Of a DNA stretch of 64,000 nucleotides, positions 3,563 through 55,315 are shown piece by piece. The notes below the pieces were generated by a model. That model was not told the origin of the DNA. It searched no databases and saw only the letters and a program-made list of their open reading frames with translations. A program made the translations under genes and the position numbers. The stretch is taken from positions 62,001-126,000 of the IMG/VR virus record IMGVR_UViG_3300042923_000281; one strand, 5' to 3'. Position 1 is the stretch's first letter; each line of letters opens with the position of its first letter.

Positions 3563-3583
3563 TCCGGAGACTGGTACCTTCTC

Positions 3584-3615
3584 CTACATCATGTCCTAGG
3601 TTTGTATTTTTTTAC
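3584..3615 (-). promoter_or_regulatory. Middle/late-type promoter candidate (GTAAAAAAATAC-N13-GATGTAG)
   Basis: Matches 52470-52503; resembles phiKZ middle (AAanntTAC) and late (TATG) consensus as recalled. Confidence 0.45.
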
Positions 3616-32928: not shown

Positions 32929-32944
32929 AAATCCCCCTGATGTA

Positions 32945-33050
32945 CATATAACTGACCCCTTCGTTTTTATTTTACAGTGGTCTCGAAACGATAATGTGTG
33001 GTTACAATACGGTTCAATTTACAAAATAAATAGACCCCCGATACATTATG
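32945..33050. promoter_or_regulatory. Divergent middle/late-type promoter pair (AAA(T/A)A(C/G)-N13/14-TATG on each strand)
   Basis: Minus: GTAAAATAAAAAC-N14-TATG (32975-32945). Plus: AAAATAAATAG-N13-TATG (33023-33050). Confidence 0.45.
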
Positions 33051-50822: not shown

Positions 50823-51140
50823 TTATTGTACTTGACGCAGGCTAGTGGCTTCGATCATCTTGGCAGTCGCCTCGTCCATGATCTTCTCAATTGCCATGCG
50901 GTCTTTCATGCCAACGCTCTGAAGGATCAGATCGTCAGCTTCTTGCTCCAGCTCCAAGGCACGGGAGAGGTTGCTGGCACGCAGGGCAGCTTTCTCGATA
51001 CGCTTGGCGTTCTTCAAGGCTTCGTATTTACGCTTGCCTTGCCAGCTCCGATAGACTCGCTTGATGGCAGTCCAGATGGACACCTTCTCTTGAGTGGTCG
51101 AAACACGGGATTCTTCCAGTTGACGGATGAGTGCGAACAT
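50823..51140 (-). CDS. Hypothetical helical protein, probably early
   Basis: Start MFALIR, GGAG RBS, after promoter copy 5. Confidence 0.7.
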   Translation of the reverse strand: MFALIRQLEESRVSTTQEKVSIWTAIKRVYRSWQGKRKYEALKNAKRIEKAALRASNLSRALELEQEADDLILQSVGMKDRMAIEKIMDEATAKMIEATSLRQVQ

Positions 51141-51183
51141 GTTGATCTCCATTGATCAGGGTTAGGGTTATGTCAGCGTAATC

Positions 51184-51210
51184 ATGTATTGTTGAAAAGA
51201 ATTCGAATCG
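51184..51210 (-). promoter_or_regulatory. Bipartite phage promoter motif, copy 5
   Basis: Identical to copy 4 over 36 bp. Confidence 0.75.
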
Positions 51211-51213
51211 AAT

Positions 51214-51250
51214 CGGTATAAGGAGCCAGGGCAATTGCCCTGGCTCCATG
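51214..51250 (-). terminator. Terminator abutting promoter copy 5
   Basis: GGAGCCAGGGCA/TGCCCTGGCTCC stem; TTATACCG tail. Confidence 0.75.
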
Positions 51251-51553
51251 TCAGCATTTGGTGCAGGCCATCTTGTAGAATTCGTTGTTGATCTCGATGA
51301 GTTGATCAACCGATGTAGCGGTGTGCAATGCATCAATGAAACACCCTGCCGCCCCTTGGATGGTCTTCATCAGGTGCTTGGCTGCTTCGAACTCATCACC
51401 TGACAACTTGTCGAAGGAGGTCCGCTTGAGCAACTGCAACATGATGTTCATGTGACTGGCAGTAATGCGGGCAGCCATCCAGCGTTCAGGGATGTCTTTG
51501 TGACCCGGTGAAGTGCTATTGGCAAAGGAAGTAGAAACGTGGACGAGTGACAT
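51251..51553 (-). CDS. Hypothetical protein
   Basis: Start MSLVHV with GAGG RBS. Confidence 0.65.
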   Translation of the reverse strand: MSLVHVSTSFANSTSPGHKDIPERWMAARITASHMNIMLQLLKRTSFDKLSGDEFEAAKHLMKTIQGAAGCFIDALHTATSVDQLIEINNEFYKMACTKC

Positions 51554-51595
51554 GAGACACCTCAAATTCAAGACTATAGGATTGGTATCTCGGCA

Positions 51596-52476
51596 AAACA
51601 AAAAAAGAAAGAAGTCTTGGGACACTGTTCGTCATCATTCGCCTCAGGGAGATCAGCCCCTTACTACGTTTCCGAGTCGACAGTGTCCCGTAACCTTGTG
51701 TAGCGCTTGTCTTCCTCATCCCCCGAGCCCTTTCACCAAGTGCGTCATCGCGTAGTGCGAGGCCTTGCGTTAATCAGTCGTAGGTTTGGATCGGACTGGA
51801 GGCCATTGCCATCCAATTCAACCGAACTCAATCGGAATCAATAGTCATCAAATGTGTTCACTGACACGGACTATTGATTAGCTCTCGTGCACCTTAGGCA
51901 CGCGCTGGATAGTCCGCTCAGACACCGCCGTGCGATAGCCCTCTGCTGGTTTCACGACGCACACTTGCGAAGCTCGTGCCATGAAGAGTACACCTTCTAA
52001 GCGAGCCATTGCTGGCATCGCCCTTGGGAGAAGACCTTTCCCCAAGTCCTGATGGTGCATCTTATCCGACGACGCAATTGCGCTCTTCTCTTGCTTAGCG
52101 ACTGCACGATTGTGCTCTTCCGCTTGGGCAGACAAGGTGACAGCTAGGGCCAACGCCACGAGAGTGGAGAAGCCGCGGGTTCTGATCAGTAGCTCCTTAG
52201 AGGCTTAATTGAACGCTCATGAGTTATCAATGGTCTCCAGTGCTACGGTGCACCTACCGTTCCACGCGCCTTATGCGTGAGGTAGGGCACCGAAGTCACT
52301 GAAACGGATGTAACGGTCCCGGTAATGCGCGGCGGGTCATCGGTCTCATTCGGCGGCGTCACGAGTGACACGGCCTTTAGAAGACGTTGTACTGATGTCC
52401 AGATGCGGCGCACGGAACCAAAGAACGATCCGAACAATGGCACGATCCTTAATCGATGTCACAGTGCTACTACATA
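51596..52476 (-). ncRNA. Candidate ~870-nt structured transcript (ncRNA, or structured mRNA for an ATC-start exported peptide)
   Basis: Promoter motif at 52470-52503, many long helices, terminal 10-bp stem plus T tract. Confidence 0.45.
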
Positions 52477-52503
52477 CAACTCGACCGAAACGTATTTATT
52501 TAC
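52470..52503 (-). promoter_or_regulatory. Middle/late-type promoter candidate (GTAAATAAATAC-N15-TATGTAG)
   Basis: Similar to 3584-3615 and 32945-32975. Confidence 0.5.
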
Positions 52504-52525
52504 CTGTGACCCGTATGTCCTTGAT

Positions 52526-53119
52526 TTAACGGGGTAATCTTGGCCGTATGTTGTTACGACGACGGTGGCCAGAGGGCACGTTATCTTCCGCTGGTTGTTC
52601 TGGCTCTGGGTAGTCTTTATTGAGGCGCGCTACAATGTCCTCAACCGACATCCAGACGATGGGGTAATTGGCCCCAACTGCCATCCCGTTAGTATCCTGC
52701 TGGAATTTCTCTTCGTCCTTCCAAGCAGCCAGCGCACCCAACAACGAATCGCGTGTACTGATCTCAGAACACATGACGTAGGTCGATTGGCCCGATGGCA
52801 GACCGTGGAAGTCTAACGTCCAGCGCTTTTCATCAGGGCTGGTGTTGTTCTTGAAGATGTCAACCTGCGCGATAGCCCCTTGTTTGGAGATCATGTAAGC
52901 CGACATGTTCATCGAGACACGAGGGTGACTGGCCATCTTCAAGCGACCACTCACCACGTCAGCGATGTTCGGCCCAGTGCCGCTCAGTGGGTAGATGAAA
53001 CCTTCATTGCTGAAGTACGTGCCGATGTCGGCTTCTAGGGCTTTGAAGTGTACGCCTTCGTTGGCCTCATGGACCTCAGGGAACCCGACCATGCCACGGC
53101 GGTAGATTAGGAAGTTCAC
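52526..53119 (-). CDS. Hypothetical protein
   Basis: 197 aa, GTG start overlapping upstream stop. Confidence 0.7.
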   Translation of the reverse strand: MNFLIYRRGMVGFPEVHEANEGVHFKALEADIGTYFSNEGFIYPLSGTGPNIADVVSGRLKMASHPRVSMNMSAYMISKQGAIAQVDIFKNNTSPDEKRWTLDFHGLPSGQSTYVMCSEISTRDSLLGALAAWKDEEKFQQDTNGMAVGANYPIVWMSVEDIVARLNKDYPEPEQPAEDNVPSGHRRRNNIRPRLPR

Positions 53120-53637
53120 AGAGTAGTCCCCTTGATAACAAATGGCTTCAATCGGCTAGCGTAAATCACATCGACCTTCGAGCCGGTCAACAGATCCAAA
53201 CGCTCAACGACTGGCATCGCCGCTTTAATAGTCATGCCGCACTTCAACATAGCAGCGAGTAGGTTACCACCCGTCCCACAGCCGTGTGTATGGCCCGCTA
53301 AGCGACGAAAGCGAGAACCGTAGGACATGATACCGAATTGCTGGTCACGGGTCATGAGGGTGCCGTGAGTGAAGCAATCGATCTTGTCTTCCAAGATGTC
53401 TTCCAGAGGGACGACGTCTCGTTTGTCAATGACTAGGCGTTCAAGAACAACGCGGAGTTTGTGTTCCAGTTCATCACGAATGGATTCATCGATGGCGGAG
53501 CCAGTGGCACCGTAAGCAAATTGCTTATCGCGGCTGATGAAGACTTTGGGACCGTCTTCGAATGCTGTAGGGATTACCAAGGCCACCTGTTTACGGTCGC
53601 CGATCAGTTTCCCATCATGGTACACAATAGCAGTCAT
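53116..53637 (-). CDS. Proteasome-beta/HslV-like Ntn peptidase
   Basis: M-T-A-I N-terminal Thr nucleophile, GD, K, GATG, GTG and D..TG..V motifs. Confidence 0.65.
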   Translation of the reverse strand: MTAIVYHDGKLIGDRKQVALVIPTAFEDGPKVFISRDKQFAYGATGSAIDESIRDELEHKLRVVLERLVIDKRDVVPLEDILEDKIDCFTHGTLMTRDQQFGIMSYGSRFRRLAGHTHGCGTGGNLLAAMLKCGMTIKAAMPVVERLDLLTGSKVDVIYASRLKPFVIKGTTL

Positions 53638-54049: not shown

Positions 54050-55315
54050 TTAGTTAGCCTGGCCAGCAGCCGGATGGTGCTTGCTGGACAGCATGGCTTC
54101 GCGGTTGGCGAATTCAGTGGCGTTTTCACCACCCGCAACGGGACCCTCGCTCAGGTAGCGACCGATCCCAGCAGACTTCTTTTCGCCGTAGGTCTCCGTC
54201 GGGGCGAGGTTGATGGTTGGGGTGTTGTACTCGAACCCGTAACTCAACGTGATGTTGAACTTGCGATGACCTTGGTAGCTTACGACACGAGTGCCTTCGG
54301 ATTCTTCCAGGGCTTCGATGTGCAACTGAGCTTCTTTCAACATCGGGTCCGGGTTGGAGTCGATTGACAGGAAGCTGGTGTTGCCAGACTTGCGGGTCTC
54401 GGTGATGCGGACGGTCAGGTCGCTGCGGCTGTGGCGGTGCGAGTAGACCTGATAGCCGAAGCCTTCAAACTCTTCAGGAGTGTCCACCACTTCCACACGA
54501 GAGACGAACCACTGCATGCGCGGGAAATCCGGTACGTTGAGGATCTCGCACATGTCGGCCACTTCGATGGCATCTTTGCAGCCCGCCGACTCACGGATAA
54601 CGCAGAGCAGGGAGTCGAAGTTCAGCTTGCCGCTTTCACGCTTCACGTACGCTTCGAACGCCTTGTGCAGATGTTCAGAGACCTGCATCTTGGCCATGAT
54701 GTCATGGAGGGTTTCCAGGTCAATCATGGTGCCGAAGCCGATGTTGTAACGGAAACGCTGAGGACGGTTGACCAGGTAGTCGGAGAACTCTTCCGCCTCG
54801 TTGCCAGTGATGACGAACATTACGCCCAGGAACGACGTGTCGCTGAACAGTGGCAGCAGACGCTCACGTTCGACCTTCTCGCTGTAGGTCTTACCGAACT
54901 CGTCGAAGTACACCATGCAAGGGCCGATGGCCTTGATGATGATGCTCAACTCTTCAGCACCCATGGCCTCAGTGACCATGATGACCGGCAGGTCTTGCGC
55001 GATCATCCAGTTACCCAGTTCTTCTGCCAGCAGGCTCTTACCCGAACCCTTCATGCCGTGCAGCAGGACGCCGTTGCTCTTACCGAAGCGGTCATAGCTG
55101 GCGGTGATCTGCTTAACGCGGGCATTGTGTTTACCAAAGCGCAGCTGAGGCAGTACGAAGGTCGGGCGGTCCTTGGTCATGATGATGCCGATACGACCGA
55201 TGGACGCCTTGTACACCATGGCCGGCACGTGGTCGATGAGGTTGGACTCATCGTTCATGCGAATGACCATGTGGTTGTCGAAGTTGTTGATGCTGATAGA
55301 AGCTTTGCGATCCAT
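54050..55315 (-). CDS. AAA+ ATPase
   Basis: GMKGSGKS Walker A, VYFDEFGK Walker B, ITGN sensor 1, NRPQRFRY arginine-finger region. Confidence 0.85.
   Translation of the reverse strand: MDRKASISINNFDNHMVIRMNDESNLIDHVPAMVYKASIGRIGIIMTKDRPTFVLPQLRFGKHNARVKQITASYDRFGKSNGVLLHGMKGSGKSLLAEELGNWMIAQDLPVIMVTEAMGAEELSIIIKAIGPCMVYFDEFGKTYSEKVERERLLPLFSDTSFLGVMFVITGNEAEEFSDYLVNRPQRFRYNIGFGTMIDLETLHDIMAKMQVSEHLHKAFEAYVKRESGKLNFDSLLCVIRESAGCKDAIEVADMCEILNVPDFPRMQWFVSRVEVVDTPEEFEGFGYQVYSHRHSRSDLTVRITETRKSGNTSFLSIDSNPDPMLKEAQLHIEALEESEGTRVVSYQGHRKFNITLSYGFEYNTPTINLAPTETYGEKKSAGIGRYLSEGPVAGGENATEFANREAMLSSKHHPAAGQAN

What the first reader, a model, noticed from the sequence alone, without database searches (positions are those of the whole stretch)
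51596..52503. ~870-nt densely structured transcription unit with no convincing gene: candidate large phage ncRNA
Seen: about 970 bp between two ordinary CDSs. On the minus strand it starts at a GTAAATAAATAC-N15-TATG promoter-like motif and ends in a 10-bp stem (GGGACACTGT 51619-28 / ACAGTGTCCC 51680-89) plus a T tract. Internal helices include a four-segment rod (52238-42/52297-301, 52246-51/52287-92, 52253-58/52281-86, 52263-67/52275-79), an 11-bp perfect stem (51836-46/51869-79), and stems at 52023-52046, 51786-91/51811-16 and 52368-79. The only ORF lacks an ATG. Inference: a large structured RNA of the kind described in other phages, or a heavily structured mRNA.
Basis: partly seen in the sequence, partly recalled or inferred. 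Interest (0 to 1): 0.7.

Follow-up and report, generated by a model that had tools for sequence, protein, structure and literature searches.

The report
Abundant, densely folded two-ORF phage RNA
The "empty" 970-bp gap in this Pseudomonas-type jumbo phage makes a very abundant RNA of about 770 nt that is base-paired almost end to end, but it is not gene-less: it carries two small conserved reading frames, one for an exported protein that appears to start at the rare codon AUC.

Summary
The helices are where stated, and the minus strand folds better than shuffles (z -3.85; rod hairpin z -5.7). Across 10-11 related jumbo-phage genomes, 55 of 172 consensus pairs keep pairing through changes on both sides. 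That is about three times the pair density of the flanking genes.

Contigs from eight independent RNA runs cover only 51701-52504. In seven of them the flanking genes are absent, and in a peat metatranscriptome they are 20-70 times lower. Three contigs stop at 51701-51703, 7 nt before the terminator-like hairpin.

"No convincing gene" is wrong. Two frames stay open in all 13 relatives. ORF-A (52443-52243, 66-123 aa) lies inside two covarying hairpin domains. ORF-B (52186-51878, about 100 aa) begins at an invariant ATC, 6-8 nt after an invariant AAGGAG, and encodes a Sec-type signal peptide. Neither has known relatives. A conserved, structured 3' region of about 200 nt follows.

Best reading: a hyper-structured, long-lived bicistronic mRNA, possibly dual-function. 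In this reading ORF-A translation unmasks the ORF-B ribosome site and AUC throttles its output. Rfam, tRNA and protein-family searches found nothing. Still unexplained are an invariant 22-mer at the 5' end and a tenfold UAAGG excess.

The parts
52492..52503 (-). AT-rich box GTAAATAAATAC, the upstream half of the promoter-like element. Its TAC is centred about 22 nt upstream of G52470.
   Evidence: Conserved as GTAAAWAAWTAC-N15-TATGT in all relatives, including the most distant one, L004. Three other sites in the genome share the architecture. It resembles the phiKZ middle-promoter description: an A-rich repeat plus TACT centred 22 nt upstream of the TSS (PMC8244752). The TSS was not mapped.
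52455..52476 (-). Invariant 22-mer TATGTAGTAGCACTGTGACATC: the TATGT(A) promoter half plus the first ~15 nt of the RNA leader.
   Evidence: Identical in 11 loci and one mismatch in L020. Unique in the 277-kb genome within 4 mismatches. Absent from GTDB genomes. The X15 RNA contig reaches 52462. Why it is invariant is unexplained.
52243..52443 (-). ORF-A, 66 aa here (GTG 52443 or TTG 52437; ATG in most relatives), behind the invariant AAGGA at 52450-52446. The stop TAG is at 52245-52243.
   Evidence: Open in all 13 relatives at 65-123 aa, with the start at the same place. P(open) is 0.07-0.17 per sequence under shuffling, and the other frames carry 1-5 stops. dN/dS is 0.35-0.65. GC1/2/3 is flat and codon adaptation is not best in frame. 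The C-terminus is not conserved. No family hit.
52315..52419 (-). 5' rod domain inside ORF-A: a long irregular helix 52419-52395 / 52340-52315, with the apical hairpin 52384-52344.
   Evidence: RNAalifold on 11 loci. Many pairs are kept through double changes, for example GC:6 UA:4 AU:1 and UA:5 CG:4.
52237..52302 (-).
   Evidence: z -5.7. 12 of 24 pairs compensatory, 0 of 500 shuffles. The apex stem occurs as CACGC/GCGUG, CACGG/CCGUG and CACCC/GGGUG, and in L004 as GCGACC/GGUCGU, always around the same UAAGGC loop.
52189..52246 (-). Candidate anti-SD helix. GUAGCACUGGAG (52246-52235, containing the ORF-A stop codon) pairs with CUCUAAGGAGCUAC (52202-52189, containing the ORF-B Shine-Dalgarno AAGGAG at 52198-52193).
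   Evidence: Predicted in the consensus fold. One compensatory change: GUAGC/GCUAC becomes GAAGC/GCUUC in L009. Duplex energy is -13 kcal/mol against -8.6 for shuffles, p about 0.06-0.1 in W-type sequences and weaker in others. This is an inference, not shown.
51878..52186 (-). ORF-B, 102 aa, read from the invariant ATC at 52186-52184. It has a Sec-type signal peptide (codons 1-22, ...LSAQA|EE) and the stop TAA at 51880-51878.
   Evidence: AAGGAG-N6-8-ATC in 12 of 12 close relatives (ATA/ATC in L004), followed by K/R and a 12-16-residue hydrophobic run encoded by different codons. Indels are in frame. P(open) is 0.01-0.12 per sequence. dN/dS is 0.4-0.85. GC1/2/3 is 0.64/0.46/0.62 and CAI is best in frame 0. 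Only 6 small clade-restricted hits among 1.84 billion representatives. The AF2 model is only the N-terminal helix, pLDDT 57.
51959..52083 (-). Structured core inside ORF-B: the long-range rod 52083-52051 / 51997-51959, enclosing the hairpins 52046-52023 and 52022-52000.
   Evidence: Consensus fold with many double changes. The ORF-B block has 54 pairs, 20 of them compensatory, against a shuffle mean of 11 and maximum of 17.
51702..51913 (-). Conserved 3' domain. It comprises the hairpin CGUGC-CUAAGGU-GCACG (51902-51886) at the ORF-B end, the 11-bp stem 51879-51836, the hairpins 51835-51822 and 51815-51797, and a multibranch 51796-51709.
   Evidence: The untranslated part is 72-88% identical where ORF-B is 57-81% and the next CDS 46-92%. 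16 of 55 pairs compensatory, 0 of 500 shuffles. The CCGAUUNAGUUCGG hairpin is kept even in L004 and L020.
51701..51703 (-). Apparent 3' end of the abundant RNA.
   Evidence: Contigs of three independent RNA runs (X15, X17, X25) end here. In X17 the depth drops from 5067 to 69. These are Logan contigs, so this is suggestive, not a mapped end.
51596..51695 (-). Terminator-like long hairpin (51695-51613, apical loop GGGGCUGAUCUCCC) followed by a U tract (51612-51596).
   Evidence: 9 of 21 pairs compensatory, 0 of 500 shuffles. It exists in two allelic forms (W, L007, L009 against L002, L003, L010, L011, L014, DT01, L013) that keep the fold. The simple terminator scan does not call it because the hairpin is long.
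51573..51601 (-). Sigma-70-like promoter of the next gene (TTGTTT-N17-TATAGT). It overlaps the U tract and is not part of the RNA unit.
   Evidence: Strongly conserved block TTTTTTGTTTTGCCGRGATACCAATCCTATAG. The next ATG is at 51553.

Best explanation
The gap encodes one highly expressed minus-strand transcript of roughly 770 nt, from about 52470 to about 51701. It is both an mRNA and an almost fully base-paired RNA.

It starts at a promoter-like element (GTAAATAAATAC-N15-TATGT). It carries two small clade-specific reading frames and ends in a conserved, structured, untranslated 3' domain.

ORF-A (66 aa) runs through two covarying hairpin domains. Its amino-acid sequence is poorly constrained, but its openness is strictly kept. 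ORF-B (102 aa) is a Sec-signal-peptide protein that initiates at an invariant AUC, 6-8 nt behind an invariant AAGGAG.

Proposed mechanism, inferred:
- The dense structure and the closed 3' domain protect the RNA from RNases, so it accumulates far above neighbouring mRNAs.
- The weak AUC start and an anti-SD helix formed by the ORF-A stop-codon region keep ORF-B translation low.
- ORF-B translation is thereby coupled to ribosomes finishing ORF-A.
- The mature 3' end lies 7 nt upstream of the terminator hairpin, which implies processing after termination.

Shown: the structure, its covariation, ORF conservation, and abundance of RNA limited to this unit.
Inferred: strand (from G-U pairs, ORFs and signals), AUC initiation, coupling, stability, and export of the ORF-B product.
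For: Structure:
- z -3.85 and -5.7.
- 55 of 172 pairs compensatory against a shuffle mean of 29.
- Three times the pair density and 4-10 times the consensus energy of the flanking CDS.
- 174 G-U cells against 39 A-C cells, which points to the minus strand.

RNA:
- Eight independent RNA libraries hold only 51701-52504. No flank was seen over 2.8 kb in four of them.
- In X17 the depth is 5067, against 69 and 266 for the flanks.
- Three contigs end at 51701-51703.

Coding:
- Both frames are open in 13 relatives.
- The ATC start and AAGGAG are invariant.
- The signal-peptide character is conserved at the protein level, not the nucleotide level.
- ORF-B has gene-like GC1/2/3 and CAI.

Coupling:
- An anti-SD helix containing the ORF-A stop codon, with one compensatory change.
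- ORF-A ends vary, always lie in or beyond the anti-SD strand, and overlap ORF-B in L020.
Against: - No strand-specific or read-level data: Logan contigs give neither direction nor exact ends. One contig (X18) reaches 52504, upstream of the proposed start, and in X17 the region is contiguous with the upstream gene.
- ORF-A has flat GC1/2/3 and no codon-adaptation signal. dN/dS is high for both ORFs, and both products are predicted disordered. The peptides themselves may therefore matter little.
- The anti-SD duplex is only marginally better than shuffles (p 0.06-0.6).
- AUC initiation is untested. A GTG, TTG or ATG lies 8-11 codons downstream in every sequence.
- The untranslated 3' domain is better conserved than the ORFs. 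UAAGG is about tenfold enriched. Both hint at an RNA-level function that a plain mRNA reading does not explain.
Confidence: 0.6

Rival explanations
1. The unit is primarily a regulatory or sponge RNA (dual-function or non-coding). The conserved folds, the 3' domain and the repeated UAAGG / AAGG motifs, several of them displayed in hairpin loops, bind a host or phage factor such as 30S subunits via the anti-SD tail or an RNA-binding protein, or they base-pair with targets. On this view the ORFs are secondary, or serve only to let ribosomes remodel the fold.
For: - The 3' untranslated domain is more conserved than either ORF or the next gene.
- UAAGG occurs 5 times against 0.5 expected, and no other 908-nt window in the genome reaches 5. 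AAGG occurs 12 times against 4.2 expected. Four AAGG sites are invariant, including the rod apex loop.
- Abundance is far above that of neighbouring genes.
- A weak AUC start sits on a very abundant RNA.
- The ORF products are predicted disordered and evolve fast.
Against: - Both ORFs are kept open with their SD sequences in 13 genomes, and ORF-B keeps a signal peptide at the protein level.
- GGA / AGGA is not enriched, so this is not a CsrA/RsmA-type signature.
- No Rfam family matches.
- No partner was identified.
- Two of the invariant AAGG sites are simply the two Shine-Dalgarno sequences.
Confidence: 0.22
2. The unit is a hok/sok-like (type I toxin-like) or lysis-timing module: a long-lived, folded, translationally silent mRNA for a small membrane-targeted protein. 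It would be activated by 3' processing and by translation of an upstream leader frame.
For: - Architecture: an upstream frame (ORF-A) ending in the strand that masks the ORF-B SD.
- An apparent 3' end 7 nt upstream of the terminator hairpin suggests 3' processing.
- The consensus fold predicts a 5'-3' pairing, GUAGCACU with AGCGCUAC, ending exactly at the contig ends.
- The ORF-B product has a hydrophobic N-terminus.
- The weak start codon suggests that output must be kept low.
Against: - The unit is twice the size of hok mRNAs.
- ORF-B is about 100 aa with a cleavable AXA signal peptide, not a ~50-aa membrane toxin.
- The frames do not overlap, except in L020.
- The 5'-3' duplex is no better than shuffled controls.
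- No antisense RNA or promoter was seen, and none could be tested without stranded reads.
- No sequence homology to any such family.
Confidence: 0.1
3. The gap holds nothing special: two tiny orphan genes with ordinary leaders plus a terminator. Structure and abundance are by-products of GC content, assembly or run selection.
For: - The runs were found by searching with this stretch, so they cover it by selection.
- Contig depths are flat averages (tool caveats).
- alifold also finds some 'covarying' pairs in the flanking CDS.
Against: - Flank controls give 3 times fewer pairs and 4-10 times weaker consensus energy.
- Slide and shuffle controls fall far below the observed values.
- laid 2.8 kb including both flanks, and four runs covered only the unit.
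- Within one run (X17) the depth contrast is 20-70-fold.
- The non-coding 3' domain is more conserved than the coding sequence.
Confidence: 0.06

Closest known systems
hok/sok-family mRNAs (type I toxin-antitoxin; own knowledge)
   Same: A very stable, extensively folded mRNA. An upstream reading frame whose translation controls a downstream frame with a masked SD. A membrane-targeted small product. Maturation by 3' processing. A predicted 5'-3' fold-back.
   Different: This unit is about 770 nt against about 400 nt. The frames are not overlapping. The product is about 100 aa with a cleavable signal peptide. No antisense RNA is known. The fold-back is statistically unsupported here. There is no sequence similarity.
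Dual-function RNAs such as S. aureus RNAIII (hld), SgrS/SgrT and SR1 (own knowledge)
   Same: An abundant, long-lived RNA with many hairpins that also encodes a small exported or membrane peptide. The untranslated 3' domain is highly conserved.
   Different: No trans target or seed is known. The loops here carry SD-like UAAGG rather than the C-rich anti-SD loops of RNAIII. There are two ORFs. It is phage-encoded.
Large phage-associated structured ncRNAs (GOLLD, ROOL and similar Rfam families)
   Same: The size class (0.6-0.9 kb), ornate covarying structure, and a home in phage genomes.
   Different: Those have no conserved ORFs. No Rfam model matches even at E <= 10. This RNA is translated-looking in two frames.
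Non-AUG (AUU) initiation at infC and pcnB in E. coli (own knowledge)
   Same: An AUH start codon kept by selection behind a good Shine-Dalgarno sequence, which implies deliberately low or IF3-sensitive initiation.
   Different: AUC rather than AUU. It sits in a phage orphan gene. No evidence of autoregulation, and initiation was not demonstrated.
sRNAs and structured leaders mapped in phiKZ-like jumbo phages (PMC11512511, PMC8244752)
   Same: RNAs from jumbo Pseudomonas phages that encode their own multisubunit RNAP. The promoter box resembles the phiKZ middle type, an A-rich repeat plus TAC about 22 nt upstream of the TSS.
   Different: Those sRNAs are under 250 nt, are 5'UTR-derived or intergenic, and are unrelated in sequence. 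No unit of this size and architecture is described there.

Membership tests
Known RNA families (Rfam 15, incl. GOLLD, ROOL, OLE, HEARO, tmRNA, 6S, riboswitches) | Score at or near the family covariance model's gathering threshold | tested here: not met
   cmscan of 51000-53000 at E <= 10 gave only four chance-level hits (12-19 bits against thresholds of 38-75).
Large non-coding RNA (generic) | No reading frame conserved across homologues | tested here: not met
   Two frames are open in all 13 homologous loci, with conserved SD and start positions. The other frames carry 1-8 stops.
Large non-coding RNA (generic) | Conserved secondary structure with compensatory changes | tested here: met
   55 of 172 pairs compensatory. 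Shuffle, slide and flank controls are all far lower.
tRNA / tRNA-like element (terminal hairpin) | Cloverleaf recognised by ARAGORN | tested here: not met
   No tRNA or tmRNA in 51000-53000. The MFE of the hairpin is a rod.
Protein-coding gene (ORF-B) | Frame kept open, in-frame indels, protein-level conservation, codon-position composition | tested here: met
   dN/dS of 0.4-0.85 shows only weak purifying selection.
Protein-coding gene (ORF-A) | Frame kept open, plus a coding composition and substitution pattern | tested here: inconclusive
   The frame is open in all 13, with the start at the same place. But GC1/2/3 is flat, CAI is not best in frame, and the C-terminus is variable.
Sec (SPase I) signal peptide | Positively charged n-region, 10-15-residue h-region, AXA-type c-region | tested here: met
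   By inspection of 12 sequences: for example (M/I)RTRGFSTLVALALAVTLSAQA|EE and IKTLSVATMAMLTLLVATVANA|AP. It holds only if translation starts at the ATC. No dedicated predictor was available. L005/L020 and L004 look more like membrane anchors.
Non-AUG (AUH) translation start | Start codon conserved at proper spacing from a strong SD, with no upstream in-frame canonical start | tested here: met
   AAGGAG-N6-8-ATC in 12 of 12 (L004: AAGGGGAG-N7-ATA), with an in-frame stop just upstream. Actual initiation is not testable with these tools.
hok/sok-type type I toxin mRNA | Cis-encoded antisense RNA | not testable with these tools
   Only unstranded contigs were available.
hok/sok-type type I toxin mRNA | 5'-3' fold-back pairing | tested here: inconclusive
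   alifold pairs 52470-52463 with 51707-51700. There is no covariation, and RNAduplex is not better than shuffles.
hok/sok-type type I toxin mRNA | Small (about 50 aa) membrane toxin overlapped by a leader ORF | tested here: not met
   ORF-B is about 100 aa with a cleavable signal. The frames are separated by 39-65 nt and overlap only in L020.
CsrA/RsmA-sequestering RNA (CsrB, RsmY/Z type) | Many GGA / ANGGA motifs in loops | tested here: not met
   GGA occurs 17 times against 13.7 expected, and AGGA 4 times against 3.3. The enriched motif is (U)AAGG followed by any base.
Intrinsic terminator | Stable hairpin directly followed by a U tract | tested here: met
   The hairpin 51695-51613, with covariation, is followed directly by the U tract 51612-51596. 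Abundant RNA contigs nevertheless stop 7 nt before it.
phiKZ-type middle promoter | A-rich repeat plus TAC(T) centred about 22 nt upstream of the TSS (PMC8244752) | tested here: inconclusive
   The motif fits if the TSS is at about 52470. The genome encodes a split RNAP beta-like subunit. Only about 4 similar sites exist in the genome, which is near chance for the loose pattern. The TSS is unmapped.

The most novel reading that the evidence does not exclude
The transcript is a new class of phage dual-function RNA. It would be a hyper-stable, end-to-end folded scaffold of about 770 nt whose conserved 3' domain and loop-displayed UAAGG motifs act in trans, for example by titrating 30S subunits or an RNA-binding or defence factor. 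Its two frames would serve mainly as ribosome-driven switches. A separate ~100-nt 3' fragment (a seed-like CACAAGGUUAC plus the terminator hairpin) would be released by cleavage at about 51701 as an sRNA.
Probability: 0.2. Interest if true: 0.85.

Novelty: new variant of a known kind. Interest (0 to 1): 0.6.

Why it matters
Jumbo phages of the pPa_SNUABM_DT01 / JPTI55 group are common in soil, compost, food and wastewater. One of them transduces genomic islands in Pseudomonas fluorescens (bioRxiv 10.1101/2024.08.29.610337).

This unit appears to be one of their most abundant RNAs. It is often the only part of the phage seen in metatranscriptomes, yet it is annotated as empty or as one hypothetical protein.

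It offers a natural case of an mRNA under simultaneous selection for dense structure and for two reading frames. It also offers a phylogenetically fixed AUC start codon. It could serve as an RNA marker for active infection by this phage group.

If the RNA also acts in trans, it would be a new kind of large phage riboregulator.

Tried and rejected
- Rfam at a permissive threshold: nothing.
- ARAGORN on the terminal hairpin, whose loop CUGAUCU mimics an anticodon loop: no tRNA.
- Simple promoter/terminator scan: misses both signals.
- The 22-mer as a repeated phage promoter: it is unique in the genome. Only the AT-box-N15-TATGT architecture recurs, about 4 times.
- Bacterial or plasmid origin: no match in GTDB representative genomes with two different patterns, and none in PLSDB.
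- Protein homology for ORF-A and ORF-B: Pfam, PHROGs and NCBIfam gave nothing. A profile search of 1.84 billion representatives found only clade members. The ESM Atlas gave no usable hit. The AlphaFold model has pLDDT 57 and shows only the signal helix.
- CsrA/RsmA sponge: GGA is not enriched.
- 5'-3' panhandle: predicted by alifold but no better than shuffled controls.
- GAUC-GAUC pairing as the reason for the invariant ATC: L005 and L020 keep ATC without GATC.
- Mini-ORFs (ATG-TAG-TAG within the 22-mer; the 7-codon ORF at 52220): no conserved SD, or not conserved.
- Universality of the cassette: the more distant relative L021 has a different gene at this position.
It was rerun without that row.
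Full report
**Setting**

The window is bases 62001-126000 of a 276,978-bp phage genome with direct terminal repeats and 54% G+C. It encodes a split multisubunit RNA-polymerase beta-like protein. Its only relative among deposited phages is Pseudomonas phage pPa_SNUABM_DT01. A similar phage, JPTI55, infects P. fluorescens SBW25 (bioRxiv 10.1101/2024.08.29.610337).

On the minus strand a 197-aa CDS stops at 52526 and a 100-aa CDS starts at 51553. DT01 has the same gap of about 1 kb between the same two genes. There it is annotated with a single 77-aa hypothetical protein.

**Observation**

- The minus strand folds at -331.8 kcal/mol against -305 +/- 7 for shuffles (z -3.85). The plus strand gives z -1.88.
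- The rod hairpin gives z -5.7.
- Rfam gives nothing, and ARAGORN gives nothing.

**Relatives**

A 20-mer from the 5' end and the downstream protein retrieved homologous loci from IMG/VR and metagenomes. With DT01 this makes 13 distinct versions, from 90% down to about 30% identity. They are clearly mosaic.

The element is absent from GTDB genomes and plasmids. A more distant relative, L021, has another gene at this position.

**Structure is conserved**

RNAalifold and pair counting support every block.

| Block | Compensatory pairs | Shuffles as good |
|---|---|---|
| Rod hairpin | 12 of 24 | 0 of 500 |
| Terminal hairpin | 9 of 21 | 0 of 500 |
| 3' domain | 16 of 55 | 0 of 500 |
| 5' half | 25 of 56 | not run |

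- Over the whole unit, 172 consensus pairs are 92% paired and 55 are compensatory. The shuffle mean is 29 and the maximum 37. Slid partners give 12-27.
- The structure runs through both reading frames.
- As a control, the neighbouring CDS of the same phages give 6-8 pairs and -1.4 to -3.4 kcal per 100 columns. The unit gives 19 pairs and -15 kcal per 100 columns.
- There are 174 G-U cells against 39 A-C cells, which points to the minus strand as the RNA.
- The rod apex is a good example. Four different stems (CACGC/GCGUG, CACGG/CCGUG, CACCC/GGGUG, and GCGACC/GGUCGU in L004) close the same loop, UAAGGC.

**It is transcribed, discretely and very strongly**

Fourteen RNA or probable-RNA runs from peat, freshwater, soil, wastewater and organismal samples hold near-identical words of this stretch. 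Six further runs of unknown type also hold them.

I laid eight of them.
- Contigs cover only 51701-52504.
- In four runs laid on 2.8 kb, neither flank appears, while the unit has depth 3-46.
- In the peat run X17, contigs over 51701-52285 have depth 2,700-5,100. The downstream-gene contig has depth 69, and the contig that includes the upstream gene has 266.
- Three independent contigs end at 51701-51703. That is 7 nt before the base of the terminator-like hairpin (51695-51613, followed by the U tract). It is also the 3' end of a helix that can close the 3' domain or pair with the 5' leader.

These are unstranded assembler contigs, so ends and strand are suggestive, not mapped. One contig (X18) extends to 52504.

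**It is not gene-less: ORF-B**

- It begins at ATC 52186, 6 nt after AAGGAG.
- The same AAGGAG-N6-8-ATC occurs in 12 of 12 closer relatives. The thirteenth, L004, has AAGGGGAG-N7-ATA.
- It is followed by K/R and a 12-16-residue hydrophobic run ending mostly in AXA. That is a Sec-type signal peptide, but only if translation starts at the ATC.
- The hydrophobic run is encoded by quite different codons in different lineages. Indels are in frame.
- The frame is open in all versions, with P(open) 0.01-0.12 per sequence under shuffling. The other frames have 2-8 stops.
- GC1/2/3 is 0.64/0.46/0.62 and codon adaptation is best in frame 0.
- dN/dS is 0.4-0.85.

**It is not gene-less: ORF-A**

- It starts behind an invariant AAGGA. 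The start codon is GTG or TTG here and ATG in most relatives.
- It is open in all 13, at 65-123 aa. Its C-terminus varies, and in L020 it overlaps ORF-B.
- Its composition is not gene-like.
- What is conserved is therefore chiefly that it is translated through the two hairpin domains.

Neither product has relatives outside the clade, and neither has a confident fold.

**Mechanism (inferred)**

The strand immediately after the rod, GUAGCACUGGAG (52246-52235), contains the ORF-A stop codon. The consensus fold pairs it with CUCUAAGGAGCUAC (52202-52189), which contains the ORF-B SD.
- L009 shows one compensatory change.
- The duplex energy is only marginally better than shuffles.

Ribosomes finishing ORF-A would open this helix. 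That is a classical coupling arrangement, and it would explain why ORF-A's openness is kept while its sequence is not. The AUC start would keep ORF-B output low despite the RNA's abundance. Dense pairing and a closed 3' domain would explain the accumulation.

**Promoter**

- GTAAAWAAWTAC-N15-TATGT is kept even in L004, where the rest of the leader differs.
- About three other sites in the genome share the architecture.
- It fits the published description of phiKZ middle promoters: an A-rich repeat plus TAC(T) about 22 nt upstream of the TSS (PMC8244752). This would put the start near G52470.

**Unexplained**

- The full 22-mer TATGTAGTAGCACTGTGACATC is invariant in genomes that are otherwise about 30% identical. 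It is unique in the genome.
- UAAGG is tenfold enriched and AAGG threefold, with four invariant sites. GGA is not enriched, so a CsrA-type sponge is unlikely.
- The untranslated 3' domain is better conserved than the ORFs.

These features keep open a dual-function or trans-acting role.

**Verdict**

The unit is a real, conserved, highly expressed and unusually structured phage transcript. It is best read as a structured bicistronic mRNA with an AUC-initiated exported protein. It is not a gene-less ncRNA.

It belongs to no described family. It most resembles hok-type mRNAs and RNAIII-type dual-function RNAs in logic, but it meets the defining features of neither.

Noticed in passing
window 51613-51695 (and the same place in L002, L003, L007, L009-L014, L001): The terminator-like hairpin exists in two allelic sequence types that keep the same fold. 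The types are distributed independently of overall relatedness: L014 is about 99% identical to the window elsewhere but carries the other type. This points to recombination at this spot.
   Followed up: partly
window 52455-52476: A 22-mer is invariant across 12 genomes and unique in the genome. It contains ATG-TAG-TAG (a start-stop) and the near-palindrome CACTGTG. No explanation was found.
   Followed up: partly
window 51596-52503, minus strand: UAAGG occurs 5 times against 0.5 expected, and AAGG 12 times against 4.2. Several copies lie in 7-nt hairpin loops (AUAAGGC, CUAAGGU). UAAGG is complementary to the extreme 3' tail of 16S rRNA (own knowledge).
   Followed up: partly
window 3571-3615 and 32930-32974 (minus strand); genome 208677 (minus strand): Other sites have the same AT-box-N14-15-(T)ATGT(A/G) architecture as the promoter-like element. 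They may form a small promoter class. The site at 3615 precedes a ~150-nt leader and a 64-aa ORF.
   Followed up: partly
window 53116-53637 and 54050-55315 (minus strand): An HslV-family peptidase homologue (PHROG 1040, E 6e-12) sits next to an AAA ATPase (PHROG 2376, E 4e-51). This is a phage-borne proteasome-like pair, syntenic with DT01 PA10_00288/00290.
   Followed up: no
window 51573-51601 (minus strand): A conserved sigma-70-like promoter (TTGTTT-N17-TATAGT) for the next gene overlaps the U tract of the terminator-like hairpin.
   Followed up: no
L020:1649-2017: In this relative the ORF-A frame runs on for 123 codons and overlaps the start of ORF-B by about 90 nt. In L005, whose ORF-B is 93% identical, ORF-A stops earlier and its sequence is very different.
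   Followed up: partly
L021:1480-2500: A more distant relative of the downstream gene lacks the whole structured unit. It has a 173-aa ORF and a short GC hairpin terminator instead, so the unit behaves as a cassette.
   Followed up: partly
runs X6-X9, X12, X16, X26, X28, X30, X32, X34-X37: Near-identical copies of this stretch turn up in DNA and RNA runs labelled as single organisms, not only in metagenomes. This suggests that DT01-like phages, or their RNA, ride along in cultures or host-associated samples.
   Followed up: no
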